This document shows positions 21,416 to 53,805 of a DNA stretch of 64,000 nt, one piece after another. This DNA comes from Macrostomum lignano (Eukaryota). Location of the stretch: NCBI GenBank assembly GCA_002269645.1, contig NIVC01001809.1, positions 170,754 to 234,753 of the forward strand. The letters run 5' to 3'. A model generated the notes under the pieces. That model did no database searches. It was given only the letters and a program-made list of their open reading frames with translations, and was not told the origin of the DNA. The stretch's first letter is position 1; every line of letters begins with the position of its first letter. The position numbers were made by a program, and so were the translations under genes.

Positions 21416-21511
<96 letters not shown>

Positions 21512-21514
21512 CTA

Positions 21515-21595
<81 letters not shown>

Positions 21596-21598
21596 CTA

Positions 21599-21695
<97 letters not shown>

Positions 21696-21700
21696 CAGAC
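21049..21700. repeat. (GACA)n microsatellite (intron 4, right part)
   Basis: Read directly. Confidence 0.95.
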
Positions 21701-21713
21701 AGCCACAACTCAC

Positions 21714-23522: not shown

Positions 23523-23614
23523 CTGAAATCGGGAGGGAAGGGGAGCCGCTGCAGGATGACTGCGGGCACCCGGGCGAAACGCCTTCAGCGACCTCCGCCC
23601 AGCAACCAGCGCTT

Positions 23615-24400: not shown

Positions 24401-24431
24401 CGATTTTCGACAGCCAGCCCAGCGCACTAAC

Positions 24432-24848: not shown

Positions 24849-24884
24849 CTGCGGGGAGGGGGCGCTTGTTAATGATGCAATAGC

Positions 24885-25510
24885 CTACCTGTCTTATCAT
24901 CTATAATACATTGCCACTCTACCTGTCTTTATTATCTAACTACCTACTCTACCTGTCTTATTATCTACCTACCTACTCTACCTGTCTTATTATCTACCTA
25001 CCTACTCTACCTGTCTTATTATCTACCTACCTACTCTACCTGTCTTATCATCTACCTACCTACTCTACCTGTCTATATTATCTACCTACCTACTCTACCT
25101 GTCTTATTATCTACCTACCTACTCTACCTGTCTTATCATCTACCTACCTACTCTACCTGTCTATATTATCTACCTACCTACTCTACCTGTCTTATTATCT
25201 ACCTACCTACTCTACCTGTCTTATCATCTACCTACCTACTCTACCTGTCTATATTATCTACCTACCTACTCTACCTGTCTTATTATCTACCTACCTACTC
25301 CACCTGTCTTTATTATCTACCTACCTACTCTCCCTCTCCTTATTATCTACCTACCTACTCTACCTGTCTTATCATCTACCTACCTACTCTTCCTGTCTTT
25401 ATTATCTACCTACCTACTCTCCCTGTCTTTATTATCTACCTACCTCATCTAACTGCCTTAATAATCTACCTACCGACTCTATCTACTGTAACTGTCTTAT
25501 TGTCTACCTA
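24885..25510. repeat. Intron-2 minisatellite, about 28-bp unit CTACCTACCTACTCTACCTGTCTTATTAT
   Basis: About 20 copies, degenerating toward 25600. Confidence 0.93.
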
Positions 25511-25667
25511 CCCACTCTGCCTGTCATATTATCTTTCTACCTACTTAGCTGTCTTTATGAGTACTATCTACCTAGCAGCTACTTTACCCTGTCTTACCGT
25601 CTACTAACCTACTCTACCAAACAATATATTCAACAATATCTCTCCCCCCATAAAAAATGGTTCTCAC

Positions 25668-25979
25668 CTCCCAGCGCTTGCCGCCAACAATCCACACGCA
25701 CGAGCCGTCATCCGAGTACACAGCCGCCTGAGCTTCTGTGGCCACCAGCAACCGTCGTTGGCAATACTCCAGCTTCACCACTGGCGACATCTCTTCTAAG
25801 AAGACGGAAGATTCGCACGAACCATCCGGAACGTTCACTAAAGTACGCGACACTGTGCCGCCCCGATCACCAACGAACACTTTCTGACAGTTTAAGCTGA
25901 CAGCAATTGACGTGATGCGGCTGCGATGACCGCAGGCCAGTTGGAATGCTTGACGGCGAAACGAGGGCGACAGAGGCAC
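25668..25979 (-). CDS. TECPR2: TECPR2-like, exon 2 (WD40)
   Basis: Acceptor tagcagcag|GTG, donor GAG|gtgaga. GHRSRITSIAVSLNCQKVFVGDRGG...FLEEMSPVVKLEYCQRRLLVAT matches TECPR2 IHKNSITALAWSPNGMKLFSGDDKG...LEEPSSIVQLDYSQKVLLVST as recalled. Confidence 0.9.
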
Positions 25980-26004
25980 CTGCTGCTAGGGGGGAGGACA
26001 AAGT

Positions 26005-26905
26005 TAGTGAATGAGCACTCTCTGACTGGATGAGGCGTGAATGAGCACTCTGTGACTGGATGAGGCGTGAATGAGCACTCTGTGACTGGATGAGGTGTGA
26101 ATGAGCATTCTGTGATTTTCTAAAGTGTGAATGAGCACTTTGTGACTGGATGAGGTGTGAATGAGCACTCTGTGACTGGATGAGGTGAATGAGCACTCTG
26201 TGACTGGATGAGGTGAATGAGCACTCTGTGACTGGATTAGGTGTGGATGAGCACTCTGTGACTGGATGAGGTGAATGAGCACTCTGTGACTGGATGAGGT
26301 GTGAATGAGCACTCTGTGACTGGATGAGGTGAATGAGCACTCTGTGACTGGATGAGGTGAATGAGCACTCTGTGACTGGATTAGGTGTGGATGAGCACTC
26401 TGTGACTGGATGAGGTGAATGAGCACTCTGTGACTGGATGAGGTGTGAATGAGCACTCTGTGACTGGATGAGGTGTGAATGAGCATTCTGTGATTTTCTA
26501 AAGTGTGAATGAGCACTTTGTGACTGGATGAGGTGTGAATGAGCACTCTGTGACTGGATGAGGTGAATGAGCACTCTGTGACTGGATGAGGTGTGAATGA
26601 GCACTCTGTGACTGGATGAGGTGAATGAGCACTCTGTGACTGGATGAGGTGAATGAGCACTCTGTGACTGGATGAGGAGTGAATGAGCACTCTGTGACTG
26701 GATTAGGTGTGAATGAGCACCCTGTTACTGGACGAGGTGTGAATGAGCACTCTGTGACTGGATGAGGCGTGAATGAGCACTCTGTGACTGGACGAGGTGA
26801 ATGAGCACTCTGTGACTGGATGAGGTGAATGAGCACTCTGTGACTGGATGAGGTGTGAATGAGCACTCTGTGACTGGATGAGGTGTGAATGAGCACTCTG
26901 ATTGA
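26005..26905. repeat. Intron-1 minisatellite, 28/30-bp unit GAATGAGCACTCTGTGACTGGATGAGGT(GT)
   Basis: About 30 copies; a rare variant (ttttctaaa) recurs about 378 bp apart. Confidence 0.95.
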
Positions 26906-27079
26906 GTGTGAATAGAGCTGGACGATAAAGCGCGAATGAGGAATGAGGCTCGATTCCAAGTACATTAATTTTTGGCTAAATTAGATTTTCAGCTTGATCT
27001 ATTAACGCCCTTGATCGGTCCAATATGCTGAACTCTAATCTAATCTTACACACTAAAAAATCCCACACAGCGCACCTAC

Positions 27080-27505
27080 CTGAACCGAACCTCGCTGAGC
27101 AGCAGTCGCCGAACTGGCAGTAAAACTCGAACCGGCTGGCGGAGGCGGCGGCTCAACGTAGATGACAACGCGAGCATCTTGAAAGCCGAGCACGGCCAGA
27201 GTTTCCAGACTGTGCCCGAGGCTGGCGGCTGTGCACGGAGCGATCCCAGCTGATGAGCCTACGATGGACGCGACAGCGGGCGGCGCCGCGAGCTGCCGGT
27301 GGCAGGCCCGGCTGGAACGATCCAACAGGTGCACGGAGCCGACACTGGTGCCAACTAGGAGGCAGTATGTGCTAGCCGCCAAGGCGGTGGCTTCCACTGG
27401 CGGCAGCGACGAACGGAACAGGCCAGAGAGGCCCGGCCGCTTTGGTAGGCAGCGGAGAAGCGGCTCCAGGGACTGCGTCTCCTGGTAGACTGACCGGCTA
27501 CTCAT
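27080..27505 (-). CDS. TECPR2: TECPR2-like, exon 1
   Basis: ATG at 27505, donor CAG|gtaggt. RSSLPPVEATALAASTYCLLVGTSVGSVHLLDR matches the TECPR2/HPS5 N-terminus (LTALD...IAVGSSIGMLYLYCR). Joined CDS is 4434 nt (1477 aa). Confidence 0.88.
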
Positions 27506-27679
27506 GCCTTCAGCTGGGCTCTGGGACGGAAACGAGACTTAGGCAGGCGCTCTATGGCAACTGGCCATTTCGAAACCTGAAAGTGACGATTTGAATTGAG
27601 GTAATGAGGTAAATATCCTCAAACAAGCCTTAAGTTCTAGGATACTAGCTACATTGCCATTATGATCTAAGCTTCTGGT

Positions 27680-28830
27680 GACCGGATGTTCTCAAGAATA
27701 CAACTCCAATAAACTTCAATACAGCTCCAAAAAACTACCTGATGATGACCGGGTGTGATCAAGAATACAGCTTTAATAAACTACCTGATGATGACCGGGT
27801 GTGATCAAGAATACAGCTTTAATAAACTACCTGATGATGACCGGGTGTGCTCAAGAATACAGCTCCAATAAACTAGCTGATGATGACCGGAAGTGCTCAA
27901 GAATACAGCTCCAATAAACTGTTTCATGGTGACCGGAAGTGATCAAGAATACAGCTCCAATAAACTAGCTGATGATGACCGGAAGTGCTCAAGAATACAG
28001 CTCCAATAAACTACCTTATGATGACCGGATGTACTCAAGAATACAGCTCCAATAAACTGTATCATGGTGACCGGAAGTGATCAAGAATACAGCTCCAATA
28101 AACTACCTTATGATGACCGGAAGTGCTCAAGAATACAGCTCCAATAAACTGTTTCATGGTGACCGGAAGTGATCAAGAATACAGCTTCAATAAACTGTTT
28201 CATGGTGACCGGAAGTGCTCAAGAATACAGCTTCAATAAACTATTTCATGGTGACCGGAAGTGCTCAAGAATACAGCTCCAATAAACTGTTTCATGGTGA
28301 CCGGAAGTGATCAAGAATACAGCTCCAATAAACTAGCTGATGATGACCGGAAGTGCTCAAGAATACAGCTTTAATAAACTGTTTAGTGATGAGCGGAAGT
28401 ACTCAAGAATACAGCTCCAATAAACTATCTGATGATGACCGGAAGTGCTCAAGAATACAGCTTTAATAAACTGTTTAGTGATGACCGGAAGTACTCAAGA
28501 ATACAGCTCCAATAAACTACCTGGTGATGACCGGAAGTACTCAAGAATACAGCTCCAATAAACTATCTGATGATGACCGGAAGTGCTCAAGAATAGAGCT
28601 TTAATAAACTGTTTAGTGATGACCGGAAGTGCTCAAGAATACAGCTCCAATAAACTACCTTATGATGACCGGAAGTGCTCAAGAATACAGCTCCAATAAA
28701 CTACCTTATGATGACCGGAAGTGCTCAAGAATACAGCTCCAATAAACTACCTTATGATGACCGGATGTACTCAAGAATACAGCTCCAATAAACTATCTGA
28801 TGATGATGACCGAAAGTGCTCAAGAATGCA
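27680..28830. repeat. Minisatellite, about 46-bp unit CAAGAATACAGCTCCAATAAACTAGCTGATGATGACCGGAAGTGCT
   Basis: About 24 copies between the calcineurin B 3' end and the TECPR2 5' acceptor. Confidence 0.95.
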
Positions 28831-29498
28831 CACAAATTTATAGCCAAACACTCTTAAAACACAGTGTATTTAAATTTGTATTGGATCAAGAAGACAATAT
28901 TACTCATACTCATACAATAAAATGAGAAAAGTAGCATTATATTGGCTTTGGTGGTTAAATATACCTACTAGTACAACAAAGGACAAAACAATTACTGTAT
29001 AATGCTATAGAATAATCTGCATTAAGGTAGAAAATATATAAATGGAAAACCGCGCAATGCAATCTATCCGTTATTAATACTAATAACTATAGACAAAATT
29101 GCGAATCCGATATTGATATATAAAGGTTAATATAATAAGCAACAATACGCAACGATCACCTGTAGGCGGATAAGGATTGAGGCGAATATTTTGGGGCTCT
29201 AATTGAATGCAACAGGACAGTTATATAATCGAGGTCAGAACTATACTTAACATCATCAGTAGGAAAAACGATTAAAATAAAAGGGCACCAATGTCTTAGC
29301 ATACTTAGTAATAACTTATACTTATATAGTAGGATAATATAAATGGTGGTAAAAAAGAAACTTTGGCAATAGCATAAACCCTGTATAAATAATAACACAT
29401 CAATTATAGTAGATGGCAAAACACAGGCATCAGGAAGACTTTAACTGTGTTAGTAGGCATTGTTAAGCGAAGTTACAGCTAGCAACATCAAACTGAGC

Positions 29499-29669
29499 TT
29501 AGATGTCAACCACCAGCTTCTTGTGAATGTCCAGGCCGCTGACCATATCGCAGAACTCTTCGTAAGAGATTTTACCGTCTCCATCTTTGTCGGCGAATAT
29601 GATGGTTTTGTCAACAATCTGTTGCAGCTGCTCGTCTTTCAGGTTGTTGCCAACCATCATTTTTAGCAC
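29499..29669 (-). CDS. PPP3R1: Calcineurin subunit B, coding exon 2
   Basis: Acceptor ccttcag|GTG; [40 protein letters not shown]...*, includes EF-hand 4. Confidence 0.96.
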
Positions 29670-29785
29670 CTGAAGGACCATGCGAGTTTTGGTATCTAGA
29701 TTTGTGAAATTAGATCTCTAAGATATAATAATAAAAAAGCATAATGAGATTAATGAGGATGAGATCTTTATGAGAATCTAAAATT

Positions 29786-30757
29786 TCAATTTGAGAACCT
29801 GAGATCTTTCAATTTGAGAACCTGAGATTTTCAATTTGAGAACCTGAGATTTTCAATTTGAGAACCTGAGATCTTCAATTTGAGAACCTGAGATCTTCAA
29901 TTTGAGAACCTGAGATTTTCAATTTGAGAACCTGAGATTTTCAATTTGAGAACCTGAGATCTTTCAATTTGAGAACCTGAGATCTTTCAATTTGAGAACC
30001 TGAGATTTTCAATTGAGAACCTGAGATTTTCAATTTGAGAACCTGAGATTTTCAATTTGAGAACCTGAGATTTTCAATTTGAGAACCTGAGATTTTCAAT
30101 TTGAGAACCTGAGATTTTCAATTTGAGAACCTGAGATCTCAATTTGAGAACCTGAGATCTTCAATTAGAGAACCTGAGATTTTCAATTTGAGAACCTGAG
30201 ATTTTCAATTTGAGAACCTGAGATCTTCAATTTGAGAACCTGAGATTTTCAATTTGAGAACCTGAGATTTTCAATTTGAGAACCTGAGATCTCAATTTGA
30301 GAACCTGAGATTTTCAATTTGAGAACCTGAGATTTTCAATTTGAGAACCTGAGATCTCAATTTGAGAACCTGAGATCTTCAATTAGAGAACCTGAGATTT
30401 TCAATTTGAGAACCTGAGGTATTCAATTTGAGAACCTGAGATCTTCAATTTGAGAACCTGAGATCTCAATTTGAGAACCTGAGATTTTCAATTTGAGAAC
30501 CTGAGATTTTCAATTTGAGAACCTGAGGTATTCAATTTGAGAACCTGAGATCTTCAATTTGAGAACCTGAGGTATTCAATTTGAGAACCTGAGATCTTCA
30601 ATTTGAGAACCTGAGGTATTCAATTTGAGAACCTGAGATTTTCAATTTGAGAACCTGAGGTATTCAATTTGAGAACCTGAGGTATTCAATTTGAGAACCT
30701 GAGGTATTCAATTTGAGAACCTGAGGTATTCAATTTGAGAACCTGAGATCTCAATTT
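29786..30757. repeat. Calcineurin B intron minisatellite, 21-23-bp unit CAATTTGAGAACCTGAGATTTT
   Basis: About 44 copies filling nearly the whole 1.1-kb intron. Confidence 0.95.
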
Positions 30758-30784
30758 TAGACCCTAGTCTTCAATTCGACTCAC

Positions 30785-35868: not shown

Positions 35869-37065
35869 TGTAGTGTGAGCATCTTTGCGTATATTTTGTT
35901 GTAAATTGACTGCATTAGTTTCTATATTGTTATTGAATTGTTATTTTGCTTTAGTTTAGTCATGCGTTTTTTTTGTGTACTTTTTCTAGTTGGTTGAAAT
36001 CTAAAATTGTAAACAGGTTAGAGTTAGACGCCAATTTTGTGACTCAGCGGAGGGTTGAGTTTGTCTGCGAACCCCAGCTTTGCGCGGTCAGCCAATCAGA
36101 ACCGGCCTGGACCCTGGCACGCGGCAAGTTCCAATTCTACCCGGCGCCGCGGGCACAGTGCAATTCGGCTTAAGCAAGCGGCCGGCCAGACGACCACCAC
36201 CCGGCTTGAGGGGGTTTTGAGGGGTTGCGACTCTGACTATAAATGAAAGTGTATTTGGCAATCGGATCTCACCCTTCTCTCCTTCTCTCTCCCTTTCCCT
36301 TTCCCCGGTTTTGTCTTGTCCAGCTTCCCGGCCGGTGGCCCGATTTTCTCCTCTCGTTGGTTCGCGCTTTGAGGCGCCTGAATTCATCACCCCGGTCCGT
36401 ATTTTTGTTCCCGCCCAACCGCAGTAGTCTTGTGGCGTAACGTCTACGGCAAATTTCTGTCTGAAGTCGTCGCTATCAAGCGCGGTTAGATAGAGACTGT
36501 CGGATCTGATCAAGTACGCGGCCTCGACCCCGAGGGCCTCAGTGTTACACTGAAGGGCAGTGCCGATAGAATTTAGTCGGTACTCCGTTGAACGGTCGGT
36601 TCGGCAGGGCTCTCGTTTGAGTGTAGGTTCTGGTTTAGGCCAGGGGTTAGGAGTCTTCTCCGTGGTCGTGTTCGGTTTTTCTTCTTCAAGCTGAGATCCG
36701 CTTGTCAGTGCGTAATATAATCATTATTATTAATCGTTACTATTCGTTATCATCAGTCTAATTATCTGCGCCGCGAATTTGCTTGAATCCTGTAACTTGA
36801 GTAATCAAATTAAACCGTCTAGCCAATTATCAGTTGTATCACGTAGGATTATCACTCTCTAAATCTTTCGGTTTGTGTTCCCTCGTGTTCTTTCTTTTCT
36901 TGTACTGTACCTGCGGCTATTGGAGAAAGACTGGTAGGACTCGCCGACCGGCGATAGGCGATTAGGATTAATAGCTTTAAAATCTTCGAACGCTCCAAGT
37001 AGGTTTGTCTAGGGCCTAATAATTGCTCACCGTGCATGCTATTATCTAATTGCCTATTTATCACA
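35869..37065 (+). mobile_element. Solo LTR, copy 2 (same family as 815-2015)
   Basis: TGTAGTG...TATCACA; own 4-bp TSD ATAT at 35865-35868 and 37066-37069. Confidence 0.88.
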
Positions 37066-39055: not shown

Positions 39056-40354
39056 GGCTAACTCGTTGCCGGGGTTACGATCATTACATTAAAGACACCT
39101 TGCTGGAGAAAGTTAAGAGACTGTGTCAAGCCGTTCTCTCTTGCAATATCAACAGATAAAAAATGATTACACCGGAAGGTCAAAAAAGCAGCGTCACAGG
39201 CCAGCCTTAGTTCGTTCCTGGGCACGAACGTAGTCCGCACTACAGACAACGTCCACGGTGCCAGCGTCGTCAGCCAGCAGGCAATTGATGAATGTCGCAC
39301 GTCTGTCCTCGTCAGTAAACTGTCTGTAGCGTTAATTAGCAATGGCACCTCCTGGACTGGCTGCTGTGGGCAGTACAACTGAAGCAACACAAATATTATC
39401 GAGCGCTAATTTTTCTAGCAACCAAAGCTTCCTTAAGAATTTGGCTGCTCTGCGTTCCGACAGATGCCCTCCTGGATTCTTCCTGGAATCTATTAGAAGT
39501 CATTGCTCAGGAAAGAGAACAAAATAGAATAGAATAGAAAACAGCAAGCAAGTACATGACGATCTTTTGGGAAAGGTTAAAAAATCGATACTGCTGATTG
39601 AGTCTAAGTATGTCAGCAATTCCCCCCGCCTCTAAGCTTTGGCATCTCAGCAAATCCTCCCTTGAGTAAAGTTGGAAGTGTGCTTTATTGCCTATATGAA
39701 CTATAAAATTCATACTGTACGGCTGAATGCATTGACATAATGCTTGTGATGATCTTTATTGTAGCGGTTTCTTCTCCTAGTAAATAAACGCTTCACTTGA
39801 TACAAGCGACCGTCAGTTGCACCATAAAACCAAACCAGAGAAATTAAAAATCCAAAGAAGGCATTCACATTCACATCATCGCCAGACGTTGATTTATAAA
39901 AAGTGATTTCATCAATCTCATTGGCATTGAGAATTGCGGTCACTTTTGATAGCACTAGCATCCAGTTTTGTGTTAAGTGGAATTTAGCTATGCTTCGCGG
40001 TTATACTTCGTATCCCAATATTTTTAACTAACTAATAGCCAGAGCACAAATACCGGTAAAGTTAATTTCCACAATGCTTCGATTTTCCCAAAAAATGTTA
40101 AATTAGCCTAAGAACTAAAGTGAGAAATGAAATAAAAAATAATCCATAGGAAGGCCGAGCATGTAAATGTGAGCTAATTTTATTCTCAGACACAAGCAAG
40201 AGCCAACAACAGATGGTGAAATATTACTGTCAGCGCACTTCGATAGTAGGCTAAAAGTCCGCCTACGCAAGTCAGTCATATTCCGAGTGGGTTTGCGAGA
40301 AAATTAAGTCGATTGCCAGCGGCAGCTCAGGCCACTTCAGCCGCAGATAATCCG

Positions 40355-40630
40355 CTACCACGCCTGAGCAACAAACGGGTGCTTCGACCGCTTGCCGAAT
40401 CGATAGCGGCTGCTCCCTTGCTGCAGCAGCTTTGTCAGCACCGAGTTGGCGACCTCAGCCTCGGGATGCGACTTTGGCAATCGCGACTCACCCAGCAGGT
40501 CAACATCGTCGGGCAGTTCAAACGACGCATCGTTAGCGACGGACATTCCAGCGGCAATAGCCAGACTCATTGCTACTAGGAGAGGTGGAAGCAGTTTACG
40601 CGCCGATTGAGAAGTTGCTCGGCAAATCAT
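40355..40630 (-). CDS. Probable RFamide neuropeptide precursor (91 aa)
   Basis: Hydrophobic leader LLPPLLVAMSLAIAAGMSVA, acidic spacer, then ...LLQQGSSRYRF-G-KR (amidation Gly + dibasic site) and a short C-terminal tail. GC-rich coding-like codon usage in an AT-rich background. Confidence 0.72.
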   Translation of the reverse strand: MICRATSQSARKLLPPLLVAMSLAIAAGMSVANDASFELPDDVDLLGESRLPKSHPEAEVANSVLTKLLQQGSSRYRFGKRSKHPFVAQAW

Positions 40631-43546
40631 TGCGAGACTCGAGAATTCTACGTAGAGGCGTGGGTTTCGATTTTGTTCGTAAGTCGGTTGTCTTCAGGTC
40701 AAGTTTATTTGATTAAATTTACAACTTCACTCTTACAAAAGCTAAAAAGTTCAAATATCATTAAAAAACAAATCAGGAGCTACGTTTGGTTTGACGGAAC
40801 TCTGCGCTACACAAAACCCCTGCCGTGACCCTCTGCTGGGGGCCGTCTGACTTTTTTAAGTTTGGGAAAATTCAAAAAAAATAACGAATACAAAAGTAAA
40901 GTTAGAAATGTTCCATGAAATGCGACTCAAAACCTGTGTATCCCCCGCCCCCTCCTTCCCATGGCTTGTAGGAAGCGTTGGGCTTCCTAACATTTTGGGG
41001 GGGGGGGTGAGGCATGAACTTCACGGTTAGCGAAATATTTCAGAAGCAGCAACCCGAACCAGCACCAGCAGTCAATTTTCATTGATGCAGAATTTCAGGG
41101 TGAAAGAGACCAGCTTTTTTCTCTCCAAACTTTTTGTTTTTAAAGCGATCTCTGCTACTCTCTGTTTGCTAGGTACAGGAAGATACAGGAAAAATCTTGT
41201 ATGCTTTCACACCAGAAGTTGCCTACTGGATCTCACGGACAGACAAATGATTGCCTTGAAAATGCTCTTAAAATGTCAGATATTTAAGCATTCAAAAACC
41301 GATAGAGCAGTAAGAGCACACTTCAGCTTGAACAAACTCACTCTTTGTGCTTGAGTTTGCAGACCTGCTCACACTCGGACTTTTGTTGTCTGTCGGTATG
41401 ATTTGCGCACAGGTGTCCGTTCAGAAAAAAAGTGCTGAACTCGGCGGAAGCTGTGGCTCTTATAGGATTTTTTGAGCAGTCCAGCTTGGCGTCCTGTAAG
41501 AGCCAATAGAGCTGCGTGCTGAGTTCTAATTGGACCACGAGCTCCTGAGATATTTATGGATGTTCATTTTTGTAGCAAATTCAAAGTCAAGATTTTCTGC
41601 TACAGCTGCATGGAGAACTATAGTAAGTGAATTCTTTACTTATCAATTAGAAAGGAACTGGATATATGTCGTATCGCTCGCTAGTGCATTTAGCGTCCTC
41701 GTCCTCTCCAGAGAAGTCGGATTTTTATAGCGCAGATTTTTCCAGACTAATTTTGTCTATGGCAAAAGCTTGTTTATCGGTCTTTCGAGGTCTTCAACGC
41801 TCGGCATGCAGTCGAACATGCTATCAAGGTCAATATTGTCGGACAGCACAAAATCCTCATCTCCATTTGACGGTTGCTCGAATTGCTTCTCTAGAAGGCG
41901 CTAATTTTCGGTTTTCTGTGAAAGGAGAACATCCATCTGTGAGGATGACACTCCAGATATGGCTTCTCCAGGAAGTTATTTGTAGTCGACATATAGTAAA
42001 CAAGTTTAACTGGTGGCTCTATGGTCTACATGTAGCTTTGATCGTGTGATTTCCCTGTTCCTCCCCAGTACTTCAAACCCTTCATATACATGTAGATATA
42101 TGTATATGTCCATGGCCGAGAAGGAGACTTCAAACCATATATACGAGCGTATGTTTAAAAAGCGTGCAGATAGCTTGCAGATGTCTATGGCCACGAGGGA
42201 GACACGTTTCTATAATGCGTCTAACCAAGGAGTTCTACAATTAGCAATCTGGAGCGGAAACGAGTTTTACCTCATGAGGCCACGCTAATTGTAAAGAATA
42301 AGGAGCCAGCACTGAATGTCTATGGCTCTGTCTGACTCTGTCTATGCAAGTCTGGCCTCATGAGGTAAAACTGAAAAACTCGTTTCCACTCCAGGTGGCT
42401 TATAATAGAACTCCTTGGTCTGGCACTAAATTTTTCGAGCTGTTAATTAAACGTCTACTTCTATGGAAGTTAGTGTCAATCATGGATTATACTAAAGCAC
42501 ACTACATGAACGAAGATCGAGATTACTCCGCAAACTATACGCCATACATATAAATATTTGTTATAACATTTTATTAGCTTATGTACTTTCTGATGACGAT
42601 TAAGCTAATCCATGATGGAATTTAACCCAGCCTCCCACGCTTGTCAGTTATGCAGGCATCACTTAATCGAAAGCTGAGTAAGTTTTTTTAAACGATGATC
42701 CGAGCTCTAACCTGATCCTCCCAGTTTCACTGAATAATTTGAGCTCTTCAAAAATCCTTTTAAAACAAAACGAAATTGTTGAGGCACTTTGTTAAACTTT
42801 TTATAATAAAAGAGTGTAAGCATAAAATGAGTGATTTAATGAAGTTTCACTGTAGCAAAACAAACTGACAAAGACAATTAATTAAAATAAAATTTCAAGA
42901 GAATGATAGGATTTGAAAAATTGTTTCATATATATATGCTTAACGGAATATTATGTTGTTACCATTCGGAATTTGTCGACAACGAGCGACTGAAGCTTTT
43001 AAAGGAACGGGCGATTATAACATTTGTTTGTTTAAATTGACTTTATCAGCGTTTCAAAAATGATCTCACCTAAGCTAAATACTTCTAACTCTATCCTCAC
43101 TTTTTCATAGTCATAAGGTGTTTTCTATGCAGGCGAGGTAATTCAAGATAAACAACTTCTTTTCTTAATAATATGGTCATCTACATTCAAGGATATTTCT
43201 TAAGCCTTTCCGCTCGGCACTGAACAACATAATCAAATCTGCGCCGATAGCAACCCAGTCCAATGAGTTCTCTGGACAAAAAACCATTGACGACAAGATG
43301 CGCAAGGATGCACTGATAGGTCTTATCCATGCAACTATTAATTTAAAGCACAAAGCATTATAGTTATCAGAAGACAGAAATAGAATTTACGAAATGTGTG
43401 ACATCTTCAAAGCGATCTATCGGAACACGCCACAAAAGCGACAAAGGTTGACAAAGGATTCCTTTGAATTCTACAGTTACAAAACTTTTTAGACAGACAG
43501 GCAGATCAACATTCGCAGCTGTGAAACAAAGGCGTCAAACTGTTAA

Positions 43547-45129: not shown

Positions 45130-45340
45130 TCAGCTGTTTGGATGCGTAATTATCTGAGAGACAGGTGTGTCATTATCTGTTTGAATGTGTAATTATCTGG
45201 GAGACAGGTGTGTCATTATCTGTTTGGATGGGTAATTATCTGGGAGACAGGTGTGTCATTATCTGTTTGGATGGGTAATTATCTGAGAGACAGGTTGCGT
45301 CAATACCTGTTTGGATGGATAATTATCTGGGAGGCAGATG
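45130..45340. repeat. About 43-bp tandem repeat (GAGACAGGTGTGTCATTATCTGTTTGGATGGGTAATTATCTGG)
   Basis: 4-5 copies immediately upstream of the exon-4 acceptor. Confidence 0.8.
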
Positions 45341-45662
45341 TCATTGACTGGTTTGTTGCTTATGGCAGACAAAAGTGCAAATATTCAGTACATGGTTACA
45401 AGTCACTTTCTGTGTACGGATAAGATACCTGATTAATAAAAGTACATAGTGACAGTTGGTACGAGTATACTATTCAGGGCTTAGCCATGATTTTTAGTGT
45501 GAGGCGCACTTGACAGACTCATAAAAATTTACGGAATCCCAGCTCCATGTGATTAATCAGTCAGTCAGTCAAAACTCGTCTTGTTACATGTAAGAGCGTG
45601 AGCAAGTCATCCCTAACCATGTGAGCCCAGATCTCACATCTTGCCTGCCGTTATCAGTTCCA

Positions 45663-46009
<347 letters not shown>

Positions 46010-46242
46010 GCTGCTGCTCCAAGCTCTGCAGCCCTCCGCGCACCAGCCTGTAATCTGCAAACAAATCCATAATCCTATTTTTGGAACCAATTCTGTCATA
46101 TATTCTGAAAAATTAATAATACACATAGGTGCAGAAATATCTTTAAAATCTATTCATCATAAACTAGGAAATATTTCAGGAAAAAAAGTTTGATAAGTAC
46201 ATTAATAACTTTCTGAAAAATTGATGGACCTAAAAAAATAGC

Positions 46243-48665
46243 TATGGCGCCTACAATCAAATGAAATGGCGCGCACAATCAAATGAAATGGCGCCCACAA
46301 TCAAATGAAATGGCGCCCACAATCAAATAAAATGGCGCCCACAATCAAATGATATGGCGCCCACAATCAAATGAAATGGCGCCCACAATCAAATGATATA
46401 GCGCCCACAATCAAATGGAATGGTGTTGTAACCCGGGTCGGCTTGGGTGCCCAGTCCCGAGTACAATATATATTATATGTGATATAACAGGCGTCGTGAC
46501 GCTCTGTCTGTACTTTTATGAATACAACGAGCAGGCGTGGCGACGCTCTGCGATAATAATTCGATCCCTCTGGTGTTGTGACACTCAGAGTTCACGCTGC
46601 GGCTCGAGGTGTGGTGACACTCTCGAGTGCTTCTATTCTCTATACCGTAGGGCGTACGCAATATATATGGTAAACGGTACCGTACTACAGAAGCTATATG
46701 GTCTCCCGGCGTTATGACGCTCTGGCAAGAATTCGGCCTAGCAAGCTTCCCGGAAAGAAAGGACTCAAACAGCAGGCGGCTTACCAGTGGCCAGATGACT
46801 GTTCACCGTTTATTATTCGCAGGTCTCAAGCGCAGTTTCCGACTTCTTCTTAATTCTCCAAGACTCTTCTCAATTAGGCTATTGTGTTTCTTTTATCCAA
46901 GTAGCTAATGTTGCTGTTTCTTTTATCAGGTCTCGCGCTTGCACTCTCGGAGCACACCAAAACACAAAAAGTACGCCGGTGGTGGGCAAGAGCCAGAGTC
47001 GCACCATAAATAGCACCCAAACCCTGGGGCAGACGGCCCCACCGGCTAAGCTCACCAAAACAAACCACGCCGGCCCAGCCAATCAAAACCCCGCCTAAGG
47101 GGGGAGGGGCTGCACCCGCGCCAAAGCTGGCCCGGCCGCAGCCAACCAGCCCTGAGCACGGGGCAGGGGAACGGCTGGGGAGGGGCACGCGCAAAGCCCG
47201 GCCGGGGCCAGACCCTGCCACGCCCGCCAACCCCCCCACCCAGCCCCAAAGTGCAACGCGCCCTGCCAACTGACAAGGGCGCATGCACTACAATGGCGCC
47301 CCTAATCAAATGAAATGGCGCCTTTAATCGAATGAAACGGCGCCCCAACAATCAAATGAAATGGCGCCCTACAATCAAATGAAATGGCGCCCTACAATCA
47401 AATAAAATGGCGCCCACAATCAACTGAAATGGTGCCCTACAATCAAATGAAATGGCGCCCCTAATCAAATGAAATGGCGCCCCTAATCAAATGAAATGGC
47501 GCCCCTACAATCAAATAAAATGGCGCCCACAATCAACTGAAATGGTGCCCTATAATCAAATGAAATGGCGCCCACAATCAAATGGAATGGCGCCCCTAAT
47601 CAAATAAAATGGCGCCTTTAATCGAATGAAACGGCTCCCCTACAATCAAATGAAATGGCGCCCCACAATCAAATGGAATGGCGCCCCTAATCAAATGAAA
47701 TGGCGCCTTCAATCGAATGAAACGGCTCCCCTACAATCAAATGAAATGGTGCCCTACAATCAAATGAAATGGCGCCCCTACAATCAAATAAAATGGCGCC
47801 CACAATCAACTGAAATGGTGCCCTACAATCAAATGAAATGGCGCCCCTAATCAAATGAAATGGCGCCCCTAATCAAATGAAATGGCGCCCCTACAATCAA
47901 ATAAAATGGCGCCCACAATCAACTGAAATGGTGCCCTATAATCAAATGAAATGGTGCCCTATAATCAAATGAAATGGCGCCCACAATCAAATGGAATGGC
48001 GCCCCTAATCAAATAAAATGGCGCCTTTAATCGAATGAAACGGCTCCCCTACAATCAAATGAAATGGCGCCCCACAATCAAATGGAATGGCGCCCCTAAT
48101 CAAATGAAATGGCGCCTTTAATCGAATGAAACGGCGCCCCTACAATCAAATGAAATGGCGCCCACAATCGAATAAAATGGCGCCCACAATCGAATGAAAT
48201 GGCGCCCACAATCGAATGAAATGGCTCCCCTACAATCAAATGAAATGGTGCCCTATAATCGAATGAAATGGCGCCCACAATCGAATGAAATGGCGCCCAC
48301 AATCGAATGATATAGCGCCCACAATCGAATGAAATGGCTCCCCTACAATCAAATGAAATGGTGCCCTATAATCGAATGAAATGGCGCCCACAATCGAATG
48401 AAATGGCGCCCACAATCGAATGAAACGGCTTCCCTACAATCAAATGAAATGGCGCCCCTAATCAAATGAAATGGCGCAAACAATCAAATGAAACGGCGCC
48501 CACAATCAAATGAATTGGCGCCCCTAATCAAATGAAATGGCGCCCCTACAATCAAATGAAATGGCGCCCACAATCAAATGAAATGGCGCCTTTAATCAAA
48601 TAAAATGGCGCCTTTAATCAAATGAAATGGCGCCCCTACAATCAAATGAAATCGCGCCCCTAATC
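46243..48665. repeat. Minisatellite, 22-24-bp unit AATCAAATGAAATGGCGCCC(C)(T)AC, interrupted by a solo LTR
   Basis: Arrays at about 46243-46423 and 47293-48665. Confidence 0.93.
46424..47292 (-). mobile_element. Solo LTR (869 bp), second family, inserted in the minisatellite
   Basis: TGT...ACA termini (minus strand starts TGTAGTG, like the other LTRs); 4-bp TSD ATGG at 46420-46423 and 47293-47296; ATTGG and TATTTAT boxes on the minus strand. Confidence 0.8.
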
Positions 48666-49429
48666 AAAAAGCGCCCTCTTCGAATAAAAAATCCATTCTG
48701 CACTCCCTAATGCGCTAAGCAAGTGCCGTACTACCCGCTAAAAACTCACTAAATCCAGCCAAGCCAAACCAGCAATACGACTCGTAAAGTCGGTCGGTCA
48801 GTCGGGAAAAGTAAACAAAACTGGCTGGTGGTGGGCCTCTTGTTCTCTGCTCTGCGCCAGCGAGTGGCTTAGATTGGGCCAAGGAGAGCTTCAACCGAAT
48901 CTGGATTGCAAACTCTTTTCCTGAGCTCGCGGGTCTTACTTGGTCTTGACCAATTACGAGTAAAACAAATTGCCTTCATTCTTTAAAGAGGCAGAGCAGT
49001 TCAGCGTTTACCGCGTCTTGATTTCGATGTGTGTTCTATAATCCTTGATCAGTCTGAAGGCGTCTTGAAACAACGGATCTGGGTAAACAGTCTCGACCTC
49101 CTTGGCTCGACCCCAACCCGCGCTGAGTCTTGAGTTGAGAAAAAATGCTTGGAGCAAAAGCAAAGGTTAGTTTATCTGTGGAACCAGGAAAACTTGCAGT
49201 ATGGCCGCCACGGCTGAAGCAGCTGATAAGCTTTTGCTACGGCCAGGGTAGTGGATAAGACAACAAGTGTTTTGTAAGGCGCAGCCCCATGCATAAGCGT
49301 AATTAAATAGACAGGAAGTTATGAAAAAGTAATAAGACAAGCCTGGAAATTATTTTGTGACTCTAGAAAACATATTTAGACCCTAGCAACCGCTTGTGAG
49401 ATCTTAACAACAATTTGGAGAACATAGCA

Positions 49430-50720
49430 GCCATTCTGATACCCTAGCAACCATTCAGATACCCTAGCAACCATTCAGATACCCTAGCAACCATTCAGAT
49501 ACCCTAGCAACCATTCAGAGACCCTAGCAACCAAGCAGATACCCTAACAACCATTCAGATACCCTAGCAACCATTCAGATACCCTAGCAACCATTCAGAT
49601 ACCCTAGCAACCATTCAGATACCCTAGCAACCATTCAGATACCCTAACAACCATTCAGATACCCTAGCAACCATTCAGATACCCTAGCAACCAAGCAGAT
49701 ACCCTAGCAACCATTCAGGTACCCTAGCAACCATTCAGATACCCTAGCAACCAAGCAGATACCCTAACAACCATTCAGATACCCTAGCAACCATTCAGAT
49801 ACCCTAGCAACCATTCAGATACCCTAGCAACCATTCAGATACCCTAGCAACCATTCAGATACCCTAACAACCATTCAGATACCCTAGCAACCATTCAGAT
49901 ACCCTAGCAACCAAGCAGATACCCTAACAACCATTCAGATACCCTAGCAACCATTCAGATACCCTAGCAACCATTCAGATACCCTAACAACCATTCAGAT
50001 ACCCTAGCAACCATTCAGATACCCTAGCAACCATTCAGATACCCTAGCAACCATTCAGATACCCTAGCAACCATTCAGATACCCTAACAACCATTCAGAT
50101 ACCCTAGCAACCATTCAGATACCCTAGCAACCATTCAGATACCCTAGCAACCAAGCAGATACCCTAGCAACCATTCAGATACCCTAGCAACCATTCAGAT
50201 ACCCTAACAACCATTCAGATACCCTAGCAACCATTCAGATACCCTAGCAACCATTCAGATACCCTAGCAACCATTCAGATACCCTAACAACCATTCAGAT
50301 ACCCTAGCAACCATTCAGATACCCTAGCAACCATTCAGATACCCTAGCAACCATTCAGATACCCTAACAACCATTCAGATACCCTAGCAACCATTCAGAT
50401 ACCCTAGCAACCATTCAGATACCCTAGCAACCAAGCAGATACCCTAGCAACCATTCAGATACCCTAGCAACCATTCAGATACCCTAACAACCATTCAGAT
50501 ACCCTAGCAACCATTCAGATACCCTAGCAACCATTCAGATACCCTAGCAACCATTCAGATACCCTAGCAACCATTCAGATACCCTAACAACCATTCAGAT
50601 ACCCTAGCAACCATTCAGATACCCTAGCAACCATTCAGATACCCTAGCAACCATTCAGATACCCTAGCAACCATTCAGATACCCTAACAACCATTCAGAT
50701 ACTCTAGCAACCATTTGTGG
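49430..50720. repeat. Minisatellite, 20-bp unit GATACCCTAGCAACCATTCA
   Basis: About 63 highly homogeneous copies; degenerate related units on both flanks (about 49380 and 50720-50880). Confidence 0.97.
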
Positions 50721-50904
50721 GACCTTAGAAACTATTTTGAGACAACTAACAATGATTTTTGAGACCTTAGCAACCATTTCGAGACCCTTAAAACCATGCA
50801 CACAGACCCTAGCAACCATATGAAGACCTTGGCAACCATTTGACAAAAACCCTAACAACGATAGAGTCCCCAGCAACAAGGAACCCTCAACCAATCAAAC
50901 TCAC

Positions 50905-51177
50905 TACTTGGCGCAGTCGATCAGCTGGTACTCGTTGGCCCTCTCATACGCCGCCTGCACGCCAGAATCCGACCACAGAGCCTGGGTGTGCCTGAAGAAC
51001 TCGGGCGGATAGTCAAAGTCTGGCCGGCTGGCCGAGCTGTGCATGAACTCCAAGCTGTCCGAGTTGCCGGGGTCGCCCAGCTCAATTGGCGGATTGAGGC
51101 CCGACATCGCGCCGGTGATGGACAGAATCGCGTCGCGGACATTTCTACGAATGTCCTGCACCTTCTGTCGCTTCTCT
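50905..51177 (-). CDS. GNAS: G protein alpha-s, exon 3 (helical domain)
   Basis: [25 protein letters not shown]...[37 protein letters not shown]; ccgcag| ... TA|gtgagt. Confidence 0.96.
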
Positions 51178-51284
51178 CTGCGGGAATTTGTTCAATTTGA
51201 ATTCCCGCACGATCGTTGAATTCTTTAAGCCAACCAGTTCTTCTACTCACACCTGTCATTCTGTGCTTAATCCCATGACACATG

Positions 51285-52045
51285 TGCTCAATACCCTGAC
51301 ACCTGTGCTCAATACCCTGACACCTGTGCTCAATACCCTGACACCTGTGCTCAATACCCTGACACCTGTGCTCAATACCCTGACACCTGTGCTCAATACC
51401 CTGACACCTGTGCTCAATACCCTGACACCTGTGCTCAATACCCTGACACCTGTGCTCAATCCCATGACACCTGTGCTCAATACCCTGACACCTGTGCTCA
51501 ATACCCTGACACCTGTGCTCAATACCCTGACACCTGTGCTCAATACCCTGACACCTGTGCTCAATACCCTGACACCTGTGCTCAATACCCTGACACCTGT
51601 GCTCAATACCCTGACACCTGTGCTCAATACCCTGACAAATGTACTCAATACCCTGACAAATGAACTCAATACCCCTGACACCTGTGCTCAATACCCTGAC
51701 ACATGTGCTCAATAACCTGATACCTGTGCTCAATACTCTGACACCTGTGCTCAATACCCCTGACAAATGTGACCGATACCCTGACACCTGTGCCCAATAC
51801 CCTTGTCATGTCACGTAACCGATTCCCTGACACATGTTCTCAATACCCCTGACACCTGTGTTCAATACCCTGATACTAGTACCTGTGCTCAATACCCTGA
51901 CACATGTGCTCAATAACCTGATACCTGTGCTCAATACCCTGACACGTGCTCAATACCCCTGACACATGTGGTCAATAACCTGACACCTGTGCTCAATACC
52001 CTGCCACCTGTGCTCAATACCCTGACACGTGACCAATACTCTGAT
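51285..52045. repeat. Intron-2 minisatellite, 21-bp unit CACCTGTGCTCAATACCCTGA
   Basis: About 18 near-perfect plus about 15 degenerate copies. Confidence 0.95.
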
Positions 52046-52244
52046 CACACTAGCGCTGGATATCCTGATACCTTCTTCTAATCTACTGTACCAGAATTTA
52101 TTAGAGGCAGGGGGTGCACTTTAAGACTACTTGGCTGCGGCCCCCTCGCAATATACCTGCTTACCTGTGGACTTAATCCTTTGACACCGACTCTAAAACC
52201 ATTAAAAATTCAAAGATTCAAAGTAATTGTCAAATCAAACTTAC

Positions 52245-52317
52245 TCAGCGCTGAATCCGTCAATATGCAAAATGCGCATCTGCTTGACTATAGTGCTCTT
52301 GCCTGACTCGCCTGCGC
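52245..52317 (-). CDS. GNAS: G protein alpha-s, exon 2 (P-loop)
   Basis: taacag|GC...(G)[23 protein letters not shown](E)|gtaagt. Confidence 0.96.
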
Positions 52318-52364
52318 CTGTTAATTGAATTGTTAATTGGAGACTTGGAAACGGTTGTAGCCTT

Positions 52365-52760
52365 GTGCCGGGGGTGTAGTCTAGTGGGGGTGTAGTCTAG
52401 TGAGGGGTTGTAGCCTAGTGAGGGGTTTTAGCCTAGTGAGGGGTTGTAGCCTAGTGAGGGGTTGTAGCCTAGTGAGGGGTTGTAGCCTAGTGGGGGAGGT
52501 TGTAGCTTAGAGCGTCGGACCTTCAACTGAAAGGTCGGGGGTTCGATTCTCGTCTCACTCGGAACAATTTGTGACCTTGAGAAAGACACTGAACTCTGCA
52601 TTGCTTTAGTTCATCCAGCTGTAAAATGGGTGCCAGCATTAGCTGGGATAATTGAGGATGTGTGGCGACCCCCTAGTCCTTGGATTGAACAGCCGTAAGC
52701 AGCTAGCTGCGGCTGAGCTGTCGGTTGCACATCTGCCCATTAGAGCAGGTGTAATAAAAA
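52365..52760 (+). mobile_element. tRNA-derived SINE whose 5' end is amplified as an 18-bp tandem repeat (TTGTAGCCTAGTGAGGGG)
   Basis: A-box-like GTAGCCTAGTGG...TTAGAGCGTCGGAC; B-box GGTTCGATTCT (52540-52550); CORE-like GTGACCTTGAGAAAGACACTGAACT...CATCCAGCTGTAAAATGGGT. The 3' boundary is approximate. Confidence 0.7.
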
Positions 52761-52843
52761 TATAGACAATATACAGATTTAGTGCATTCGAAATTGGGAT
52801 TTAAAAATGGGGAAGGACAGGTGAACGAACGCTGGCCACCCAC

Positions 52844-52961
52844 CCAGCAGAAGCAGTCTGTGAGTACCGCTGTACTCCTCGCGCTCCTTCCGCAGCTTCC
52901 TCTCGATGCTGCGACTTCGAAGTTCGCCCTCGTCTGGTTTACCGAGTCTAAAGCAGCCCAT
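52844..52961 (-). CDS. GNAS: G protein alpha-s, proximal first exon (1b): MGCF...THRLLLL
   Basis: Canonical Gs start MGC and HRLLLLG; phase-1 donor G|gtgggt. Gives a 374-aa protein. Confidence 0.92.
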
Positions 52962-53277
52962 TGTCGGCAGCTGCTCGAAGTTTTTCTAATTTCTGGATGC
53001 TTTTAAAGACAGCAGACTATGGTCTACATTTTTTACTTAGCTGAGATTCACTCAGCTTTGCGATGTCTGTAGAGAGATTTCTTCTTACGAAAGTACTGAA
53101 TTTAAATGCGCGCCCATTCGTCGTTAAATTTATCGCGTTATTTGGAATTCCGTAAAAAAGCGCTATGCATAGCTAAGAGAAGTCTTAAGTTCTTAACGTT
53201 TGTTGAAATATTATAGCGTTTTTTTGTGCTAATAATTACAAACATTTTTTTCAACAACAGCTAGATTCTGTGTTAGA

Positions 53278-53805
53278 TCTTGTCCATCCGCCACTAACTG
53301 GACTTGTCCATCAGACACTAACTGGACTTGTCCATCGATCAGACACTAATTGGACTTGTCCATTAAACACTAATTGGACTTGTCCATCGATCAGACACTA
53401 ATTGGACTTGTCCATCGATCAGACACTAACTAGACTTGTCCATCAGACACTAACTGGACTTGTCCATCAGACACTAACTAGACTTGTCCATTAGACACTA
53501 ACTGGACTTGTCCATCCGCCACTAACTGGACTTGTCCATCAGACACTAACTGGACTTGTCCATCGATCAGACACTAATTGGACTTGTCCATCGATCAGAC
53601 ACTAATTGGACTTGTCCATTAGACACTAATTGGACTTGTCCATCGATCAGACACTAATTGGACTTGTCCATCGATCAGACACTAACTGGACTTGTCCATC
53701 AGACACTAACTAGACTTGTCCATCAGACACTAACTGGACTTGTCCATCAGACACTAACTGGACTTGTCCATCCGACACTAACTGGACTTGTCCATCAGAC
53801 GCTAA
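53278..53805. repeat. Minisatellite, 24/28-bp unit GACTTGTCCATC(GATC)AGACACTAA(C/T)TG
   Basis: About 20 copies between the two alternative first exons. Confidence 0.93.

What the first reader, a model, noticed from the sequence alone, without database searches (positions are those of the whole stretch)
40355..40630. Candidate novel long RFamide neuropeptide precursor (...LLQQGSSRYRF-amide)
Seen: a 91-aa single-exon ORF with a signal-peptide-like leader, an acidic spacer and one RYRF-G-KR cassette. Known: G-KR is the standard amidation plus prohormone-convertase site. Inference: cleavage at the monobasic R in ESR would release a 28-mer, LPKSHPEAEVANSVLTKLLQQGSSRYRFa. It is neither a canonical NPF (GRPRFa, usually intron-split) nor a multi-copy YIRFa/FMRFa precursor, and it lacks the luqin C-terminal Cys pair, so it may be an unassigned family.
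Basis: partly seen in the sequence, partly recalled or inferred. Interest (0 to 1): 0.7.

Follow-up and report, generated by a model that had tools for sequence, protein, structure and literature searches.

The report
Orphan RFamide neuropeptide precursor candidate
A small, transcribed gene of the flatworm Macrostomum lignano has the typical build of a precursor for one amidated "RFamide" signalling peptide; it fits no known peptide family and has no detectable relative in another species, so it is a plausible but unproven new neuropeptide.

Summary
Window 40355..40630 (minus strand) is an ATG-started 91-codon ORF. It has a signal-peptide-like leader, an acidic stretch, a predicted helix and one RYRF-G-KR cassette 10 residues from the stop. 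The window comes from Macrostomum lignano (Mlig_3_7). The ORF is already a GenBank CDS, named only "hypothetical protein", in an annotation built wholly from RNA-seq transcripts, so a transcript exists. A second copy, 98% identical including its flanks, lies on another contig.

The most likely reading is a secreted prohormone giving one long (25-50 aa) C-terminally amidated ...GSSRYRF-NH2 peptide.

It is not a canonical NPF/NPY. Similarity to NPY/NPF profiles is no better than for shuffled sequences that keep only RYRFGKR, and the family's intron is absent. Luqin and short multi-copy FLP features are also missing.

Exhaustive protein searches found only the gene itself. Conservation, neuronal expression and processing could not be tested here. 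Verdict: a credible new member of a known kind, of moderate interest.

The parts
40355..40630 (-). Complete single-exon CDS (91 codons plus TAG stop) of the candidate prohormone; GenBank 'hypothetical protein' of Macrostomum lignano
40535..40630 (-). Signal-peptide-like leader, residues 1-32. Basic n-region R4/R11/K12, hydrophobic core 13-32, candidate cleavage after G28 or A32
   Evidence: Hydropathy profile; crude signal-peptide rule; AlphaFold helix 14-33. SignalP was not available.
40481..40534 (-). Acidic spacer or N-terminal part of the peptide, residues 33-50 (NDASFELPDDVDLLGESR; 6 D/E, 1 R)
40397..40480 (-). Residues 51-78, LPKSHPEAEVANSVLTKLLQQGSSRYRF. It contains the motif-conforming monobasic site R-L-P-K53 and the C-terminal RYRF that would be amidated
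40418..40465 (-). Predicted alpha-helix, residues 56-71 (PEAEVANSVLTKLLQQ). Highest local pLDDT (about 78); only weakly amphipathic
   Evidence: Hydrophobic moment 0.33 against 0.20 for shuffles, 11% of shuffles reach it.
40388..40396 (-). G79-K80-R81: amidation donor glycine plus dibasic convertase site. The only dibasic site outside the leader
40358..40387 (-). C-terminal flanking peptide SKHPFVAQAW (no cysteine)
40179..40184 (-). AATAAA polyadenylation-signal consensus 170 nt downstream of the stop, at the low-coordinate edge of the GC island
   Evidence: Read directly from the sequence; GC profile. Its use as a poly(A) signal is inferred.

Best explanation
This is a real, transcribed, single-exon gene of Macrostomum lignano, present in two near-identical copies. 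It encodes a small secreted prohormone.

Inferred mechanism:
1. The leader is removed on entry to the ER, after G28 or A32.
2. A prohormone convertase cuts after K80-R81.
3. A carboxypeptidase trims the basic residues.
4. PHM/PAL convert G79 into a C-terminal amide.

The product is one long peptide ending ...LLQQGSSRYRF-NH2. It would be 46-50 residues if nothing else is cut, 25 residues if the motif-conforming RLPK53 site is used, and 28 residues only if the unsupported R50 site is used. It has a helical middle (residues 56-71) and a flexible RxRF-amide tail. That tail is the kind of C-terminus read by RFamide/NPY-type GPCRs, and in some animals by peptide-gated DEG/ENaC channels.

By sequence it is an orphan. 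It shares only the RxRF-G-KR processing cassette with NPF/NPY and belongs to no described family.

Shown: the ORF, its composition, its annotation from transcripts, its duplicate copy, and the lack of homologues. Inferred: secretion, every processing step, amidation, neuronal expression and the receptor class.
For: - ORF and features.
- It is the only ORF in the window that combines a signal-peptide-like leader with RF-G-KR.
- GC island of about 500 nt coincides with the ORF plus short UTRs, and AATAAA lies 170 nt after the stop.
- The codon model favours the sense frame.
- It is a called NCBI gene. The GenBank annotation of Mlig_3_7 comes only from RNA-seq-derived transcripts run through TransDecoder, with repeat-overlapping and non-coding transcripts removed (PMC5730564).
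- A second intact copy exists, with one synonymous and one conservative change, V64M.
- It is not in a tandem or dispersed repeat and has no Rfam match.
- The architecture (small, no Pfam domain, no cysteine outside the leader, single dibasic site next to a Gly) matches the planarian prohormones validated by mass spectrometry (PMC2953531 Table S5).
- A helix is predicted in the peptide body.
Against: - No homologue in any other species, by word-indexed search of 5.8 billion proteins or by exhaustive phmmer of 1.84 billion representatives. Selection on the RYRFGKR cassette is therefore undemonstrated.
- The two genomic copies are as similar in their flanks (1.2-1.6% divergence) as in the ORF (0.7%, 2 differences), so they say nothing about constraint.
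- No expression level, tissue or peptidomic data could be retrieved. Mlig006804 was not found in any searched text or supplement.
- The signal peptide rests on heuristics, and the 12-residue n-region is long.
- The AlphaFold model has low confidence (pLDDT 60, single sequence).
- An RF-G-KR motif is expected about 0.4 times per window by chance.
Confidence: 0.62

Rival explanations
1. It is a highly divergent member of the NPY/NPF superfamily: the macrostomid version of a 'long' RxRF-amide peptide. It would have lost the GRPRF tail, the tyrosines and the family's intron.
For: - The C-terminus R-x-R-F-G-K-R fits the family's RxR[F/Y]-amide rule.
- It is a single-copy long peptide, with a helix before a flexible tail.
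- If there is no internal cut, the peptide follows the signal peptide directly, as in NPF.
- hhalign places ANSVLTKLLQQ--GSSRYRFGKR on L..YL..LNEY.AIVGRPRFGKR.
- One planarian family member (npy-7) is not listed among those with the conserved intron.
- No M. lignano protein appeared among 49 NPY/NPF hits of the planarian profile, so a canonical NPF was not seen in its annotated proteome.
Against: - hhalign probabilities are only 36% and 22%.
- The HMM score of 5.8 bits equals that of shuffles keeping only RYRFGKR (6.0 +/- 1.5; 217 of 500 reach it).
- No hit to Pfam PF00159 even at E<=10.
- The family-invariant R-P-R and preceding G, the PPxRPxxF start and the LxxYLxxLNEY helix are all absent.
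- Positions -10 and -17 are Leu and Asn, not Tyr.
- No intron interrupts the Arg codon.
Confidence: 0.12
2. It is a real secreted small protein that is not a neuropeptide, for example a gland or reproductive secretion. The RFGKR near its end is either not processed or is incidental.
For: - M. lignano expresses many small, fast-evolving, lineage-restricted secreted proteins, for example reproduction-related genes (abstracts of PMC7336406 and PMC5977470).
- Orphan status is typical of such genes.
Against: - Mlig006804 is absent from the supplementary tables of the reproduction-related gene study, as far as they are held as text.
- A Gly-Lys-Arg directly after an aromatic residue, 10 residues from the C-terminus of a cysteine-free precursor under 100 aa, is the textbook prohormone layout (compare).
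Confidence: 0.13
3. It is a chance ORF on a weakly expressed or non-coding transcript that TransDecoder picked up. No stable protein is made.
For: - The ORF is short (91 aa).
- It has no homologue anywhere.
- There is no measurable constraint between the two copies.
- The motif alone is expected 0.41 times per window.
- An 88-codon open frame also runs antisense.
Against: - Leader and cassette co-occur in only 1 of 117 ORFs.
- A GC island matches the ORF.
- The codon model prefers the sense frame.
- The antisense frame has no ATG; it was listed only with a TTG start.
- The ORF is intact in both copies.
Confidence: 0.13

Closest known systems
Flatworm/lophotrochozoan neuropeptide F (NPY superfamily; e.g. 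Schmidtea npy-1 to npy-11, Arthurdendyus and Moniezia NPF)
   Same: Small precursor giving a single long peptide. Helical body and C-terminal R-x-R-F followed by G-K-R and a short C-terminal flanking peptide.
   Different: It lacks the invariant G-R-P-R-F/Y, the PPxRPxxF N-terminus and the LxxYLxxLNEY helix with its tyrosines. It also lacks the intron in the penultimate Arg codon. Profile scores are no better than for motif-only shuffles, and there is no PF00159 hit.
Luqin-type precursors of parasitic flatworms (Koziol et al. 2016, as reviewed in PMC7041311)
   Same: A single RFamide peptide placed near the C-terminus of the precursor, with no C-terminal cysteine pair.
   Different: Luqins keep a WRPQ/WRPH-GRF-amide core. 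This peptide ends QQGSSRYRF, with no Trp and no Arg-Pro.
Flatworm FMRFamide-like peptides (YIRFamide spp-11/npp-23, FRFamide npp-4) and short NPF-type RLRF-amide peptides
   Same: C-terminal aromatic-Arg-Phe-amide, made from x-R-F-G-K-R.
   Different: Those are short peptides (about 4-10 aa) bounded by basic sites on both sides and are often repeated. Here there is one copy and no basic cleavage motif within 20 residues upstream of RYRF. The RLRF-amide consensus of sNPF is from my own knowledge and was not tested.

Membership tests
NPY/NPF superfamily | C-terminal R-x-R-[F/Y] followed by Gly and a basic cleavage site | tested here: met
   R75-Y76-R77-F78-G79-K80-R81
NPY/NPF superfamily | Invariant G-R-P-R-[F/Y] tail of flatworm and lophotrochozoan members | tested here: not met
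   R-P-R is invariant in the 8-sequence planarian alignment and in the 32-sequence broad alignment. G before it is at least 90% conserved in the broad one. The ORF has S-R-Y-R-F.
NPY/NPF superfamily | Conserved body: PPxRPxxF start and LxxYLxxLNEY helix, with Tyr at -10 and -17 from the C-terminus (the Tyr positions are from my own knowledge of flatworm NPF) | tested here: not met
   Position -10 is L69 and -17 is N62. The only Tyr is Y76, and there is no PPxRP.
NPY/NPF superfamily | Intron inside the codon of the Arg that precedes the terminal aromatic residue | tested here: not met
   The CDS is uninterrupted through cgc tat cga ttc ggc aag cgg. The intron is present in 10 of 11 planarian npy genes (PMC2953531).
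NPY/NPF superfamily | Profile-level sequence similarity beyond the processing cassette | tested here: not met
   hhalign probability 36% (14 columns) and 22% (25 columns). HMM score 5.8 bits, against 6.0 +/- 1.5 for shuffles keeping only RYRFGKR. No Pfam hit at E<=10. Not recovered by the planarian NPY profile search.
NPY/NPF superfamily | Activates an NPY/NPF-type GPCR | not testable with these tools
   Needs receptor expression assays.
Luqin / RYamide | WRPQ- or WRPH-GRF-amide core (flatworms and other spiralians) | tested here: not met
   The peptide ends QQGSSRYRF, and the only Trp is the last residue of the precursor.
Luqin / RYamide | Two cysteines about 10 residues apart in the C-terminal part of the precursor | tested here: not met
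   The only Cys is C3. This feature is also missing in parasitic-flatworm luqins, so on its own it does not exclude membership.
FMRFamide-like peptides (flatworm YIRF/FRF-amides) | Short peptide(s) bounded on both sides by basic cleavage sites, usually several copies per precursor | tested here: not met
   One RF-G-KR cassette. The nearest upstream motif-conforming basic site is K53, 25 residues before F78. Compare npp-4 and npp-23.
Generic amidated neuropeptide/peptide-hormone precursor | N-terminal signal peptide | tested here: met
   Heuristic only: basic n-region, uncharged hydrophobic core 13-32, small -3/-1 residues. SignalP was not available.
Generic amidated neuropeptide/peptide-hormone precursor | Gly plus dibasic site after the bioactive C-terminus; small precursor without domains | tested here: met
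   G79-K80-R81; 91 aa; no Pfam family.
Generic amidated neuropeptide/peptide-hormone precursor | Transcribed | tested here: met
   Indirect: it is a GenBank CDS, and the annotation was built only from RNA-seq transcripts. Read coverage itself was not seen.
Generic amidated neuropeptide/peptide-hormone precursor | Expressed in neurons or endocrine cells, PC2-dependent processing, amidated product detectable | not testable with these tools
   No expression atlas or peptidome for M. lignano was reachable.
Generic amidated neuropeptide/peptide-hormone precursor | Conservation of the peptide and cleavage sites in related species | tested here: inconclusive
   Only self and a 99%-identical paralogue were found. 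The paralogue's flanks are equally similar. Other Macrostomum genomes and transcriptomes were not searchable.

The most novel reading that the evidence does not exclude
The gene founds a previously undescribed, possibly Macrostomorpha-restricted family of long RxRF-amide neuropeptides with its own receptor. That receptor could be a GPCR or a peptide-gated DEG/ENaC channel, such as the FaNaC/ASIC-like gene 16 kb away on the same strand. No known flatworm family accounts for it.
Probability: 0.35. Interest if true: 0.5.

Novelty: new member of a known kind. Interest (0 to 1): 0.35.

Why it matters
Macrostomum lignano is a transgenic, regenerating flatworm model from an early-branching flatworm lineage. 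I found no catalogue of its neuropeptides in the literature I could reach.

A validated extra RFamide peptide would add a ligand for deorphanising flatworm RFamide/NPY-type GPCRs or FaNaC-like channels. Those receptor classes are of interest as anthelmintic targets. It would also show how far the RxRF-amide C-terminus can be carried on an unrelated peptide body.

If the gene proves to be restricted to one genus, it is one more example of fast turnover of neuropeptide genes in flatworms. That would be useful but not surprising.

Tried and rejected
- Homology: a word-indexed search of 5.8 billion proteins at E<=10 and an exhaustive phmmer of 1.84 billion representatives returned only the gene itself. 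Pfam and PDB sequence searches returned nothing.
- Paralogue as a constraint test: rejected. The two loci are about 98% identical over more than 4.6 kb, flanks included, and the ORF has 2 differences.
- Independent transcript evidence from Logan or other assemblies: the exact-protein look-up finds only the NCBI contigs. The same is true for the neighbouring channel gene, so the absence says nothing.
- Literature: 'RYRFamide', 'YRFamide', 'RYRFG', 'SRYRF' and similar terms gave no neuropeptide with this ending. 'Mlig006804' is absent from the searched texts and from two sets of supplements. McVeigh et al. 2009, McVeigh et al. 2012 and the NeuroPred paper are not held, and no PMC id was found for Koziol et al. 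2016. A prior mention in their M. lignano tables therefore cannot be excluded.
- NPF membership: tested with two profiles and a shuffle control, and rejected on sequence grounds.
- Structure: the single-sequence AlphaFold model has pLDDT 60. I used it only for secondary structure and did not run a fold search, because a low-confidence model gives meaningless matches.
- The bacterial promoter/terminator scan is irrelevant to a eukaryotic gene and was ignored.
- The antisense 88-codon frame (40313..40579, plus strand) has no ATG and a lower codon score, so it was rejected as a gene.

Full report
**What is there**

Window 40355..40630 on the minus strand is an ATG-initiated ORF of 91 codons ending in TAG. 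The stop-to-stop frame is 112 codons and contains no earlier Met.

The N-terminus has three basic residues (R4, R11, K12). These are followed by an uncharged hydrophobic stretch, L13-A32, with 9-residue Kyte-Doolittle means up to 2.76. Small residues at -3/-1 allow signal-peptidase cleavage after G28 or after A32.

N33-R50 is acidic, with 6 D/E in 18 residues. L51-F78 is net basic and ends in RYRF. G79-K80-R81 follows, and then a 10-residue tail, SKHPFVAQAW. The only cysteine is C3 and the only tyrosine is Y76.

**Is it more than chance?**

The motif R[FY]G[KR][KR] occurs once in the six-frame translation of the window. First-order Markov random windows give 0.41 on average, so the motif alone proves nothing. 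However, among the 117 ATG-ORFs of at least 50 aa in the window, 3 pass a crude signal-peptide rule and 1 has the RF-G-KR motif. Only this ORF has both.

The ORF lies on a GC island, 0.57 against 0.39-0.43 in 500-nt flanks. At 100-nt resolution the island spans about 40200-40700. That is the size of a compact mRNA, and an AATAAA sits 170 nt after the stop at 40184..40179.

A codon model trained on the neighbouring channel gene scores the sense frame at +11.7 bits. The other two sense frames score -24 and -38, and the best antisense frame scores +3.6. The 88-codon antisense frame has no ATG. The locus is not in a tandem or dispersed repeat and has no Rfam match.

**Source and annotation**

The exact protein is a called gene on NCBI assembly GCA_002269645.1, contig NIVC01001809.1. 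Its 90% cluster holds one other member, PAA87795.1, 'hypothetical protein BOX15_Mlig006804g2 [Macrostomum lignano]', on contig NIVC01000217.1. The window is therefore M. lignano, assembly Mlig_3_7.

The paper describing that assembly states that the GenBank annotation is the 'coregenes' subset of a genome-guided RNA-seq transcriptome. That transcriptome was built with StringTie and TACO, with TBONE setting gene boundaries from spliced-leader and poly(A) reads and TransDecoder calling ORFs. Non-coding and repeat-overlapping transcripts were removed (PMC5730564). I could not see the read coverage itself.

**The second copy**

The two loci align at about 98% identity over more than 4.6 kb around the gene. 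A base-by-base count gives 2 differences in the 276-nt ORF: one synonymous change at 40586 and V64M at 40441. That is 0.7%, against 1.2-1.6% in the neighbouring 500-1000-nt blocks. The difference is far too small to show purifying selection. This duplicate reflects the known redundancy of the assembly and is not evidence of conservation.

**Relatives elsewhere**

No relative was found in any other species.
- The word-indexed search of 5.8 billion proteins at E<=10 returned only the gene itself.
- An exhaustive phmmer against 1.84 billion cluster representatives returned only the gene itself at E<=0.001.
- Pfam at E<=10 and the PDB sequence set returned nothing.

Short, fast-evolving prohormones are routinely invisible to such searches. 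I also could not search other Macrostomum genomes or transcriptomes. The key criterion, conservation of RYRFGKR in related species, therefore stays open.

**Test against NPF/NPY**

I took eight Schmidtea NPY-superfamily prohormones from Table S5 of PMC2953531 and aligned them as A1. I used that profile to collect 49 NPY/NPF proteins from flatworms, molluscs, annelids, a nemertean and a priapulid. No M. lignano protein, and not this ORF, was among them.

The collected sequences are strikingly uniform...PPxRPxxFxSPxELRxYLxxLNEY[YF]AIVGRPRFGKR. In the 32-sequence alignment A2, R-P-R is invariant.

Against the ORF, hhalign aligns only the cassette and a few residues before it, with probability 36% for A1 and 22% for A2. 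An HMM of A2 scores the ORF at 5.8 bits. Five hundred versions with residues 33-74 shuffled and only RYRFGKR kept in place score 6.0 +/- 1.5, and 217 of them reach the real score. All similarity therefore lies in the processing cassette.

The family's hallmark intron sits in the codon of the Arg before the terminal aromatic residue. It is present in 10 of 11 planarian genes and is absent here, because the CDS runs uninterrupted. Positions -10 and -17 from the C-terminus are Leu and Asn, not Tyr. I therefore do not file it as an NPF. It may still work like one: a long peptide with a helix and an RxRF-amide tail.

**Other families**

In parasitic flatworms, however, luqin precursors also lack that pair and carry their single peptide near the C-terminus (PMC7041311). 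The argument is not valid as stated. The exclusion still holds, because flatworm luqins keep a WRPQ/WRPH core that is absent here.

*Flatworm FLPs.* YIRFamide and FRFamide precursors (npp-4, npp-23) are short peptides bounded by basic sites on both sides and are often repeated. This gene has one cassette and no conforming upstream site closer than K53.

*Literature.* Text searches for RYRFamide, YRFamide, RYRFG, SRYRF and variants found no neuropeptide with this ending.

**Processing**

I applied the usual known-motif rule, in which a basic residue lies 0, 2, 4 or 6 positions upstream of the cleaved K/R. The rule is from my own knowledge of the Devi and NeuroPred models; the NeuroPred paper was not retrievable.
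- The sites that conform are K80-R81, K83 and K53 (R-L-P-K).
- R50, K67, R75 and R77 do not conform.
- A planarian precedent for an RxxK site is the predicted cut after REIK in NPY-7, whose N-terminal fragment is flagged in Table S5 as detected in sexual animals.

A 25-mer (S54-F78) or the uncut 46-50-mer is more likely. All share the amidated ...GSSRYRF-NH2 end. Predicted masses are given.

A single-sequence AlphaFold model (mean pLDDT 60, used for secondary structure only) puts helices at 14-33 (the leader) and at 56-71 (PEAEVANSVLTKLLQQ, local pLDDT about 78). It leaves the GSSRYRF tail unstructured. The helix is only weakly amphipathic: its hydrophobic moment is 0.33, against 0.20 for shuffles, and 11% of shuffles reach that value.

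**Verdict**

The best explanation is a lineage-restricted prohormone for one long RYRF-amide peptide (confidence about 0.6). The rivals are a very divergent NPF, a non-neuropeptide secreted protein, and a chance ORF on a transcript, at about 0.12-0.13 each.

It is a new, unassigned member of a well-known kind of gene. That makes it of moderate interest: useful for receptor deorphanisation in a tractable flatworm, but not surprising, given how many lineage-specific neuropeptides flatworms already have.

Noticed in passing
window 56902-58707 (-): Single-exon 601-aa DEG/ENaC channel gene (Pfam ASC, E=2.6e-84), an annotated NCBI gene. Its best solved-structure match is the Aplysia FMRFamide-gated Na+ channel 7yvb (E=3.8e-42), marginally ahead of ASIC1 (4e-39). 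It lies 16 kb from the RFamide precursor on the same strand. The proximity is probably coincidental, but the channel is a cheap candidate receptor to test.
   Followed up: partly
window about 43547 to beyond 46600 (-); L002 1-7084: A multi-exon G-protein alpha subunit gene (400 aa; Pfam G-alpha) ends about 2.9 kb upstream of the precursor gene on the same strand. Its introns hold several minisatellite arrays. The same order (G-alpha, precursor, EF-hand protein) is kept on the paralogous contig.
   Followed up: partly
window 17944-20955 (+): 1003-aa ORF with reverse transcriptase and RNase H domains (Pfam RVT_1, RNase_H): a non-LTR retrotransposon copy with an apparently intact pol-like frame.
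   Followed up: no
window 6177-17177, 21063-30776, 45134-53805: Extremely dense micro- and minisatellite arrays: for example a 12-mer repeated 227 times at 10885-13618, AGAC repeated 240 times at 16237-17177, and a 20-mer repeated 65 times at 49425-50715. They have strong strand skews (GC skew up to 0.63) and create many long spurious ORFs in several frames.
   Followed up: no
window 4961-6058 (+): 365-aa ORF from its first ATG with a clear signal-peptide-like leader (MYNKARWGSHAILLTLLLLATLCSA...) and no Pfam family. It is one of only three ORFs in the window to pass the crude signal-peptide rule. Possibly another lineage-specific secreted protein.
   Followed up: no
window 35873-37065: About 1.2 kb present in the window but absent from the otherwise collinear paralogous contig (L002 junction near 13524-13530). 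No terminal direct repeats or long inverted repeats were found, so its nature (insertion or deletion) is unknown.
   Followed up: partly
window 21060-23522 (-) and 13480-15960 (-): Long ORFs (820 and 826 aa) that mix unique, protein-like sequence with repeat-encoded low-complexity runs (QEDPKNR, SPLLTPKNRPY). There is no Pfam hit for the first. It is unclear whether these are exons of a real gene interrupted by expanded repeats.
   Followed up: no
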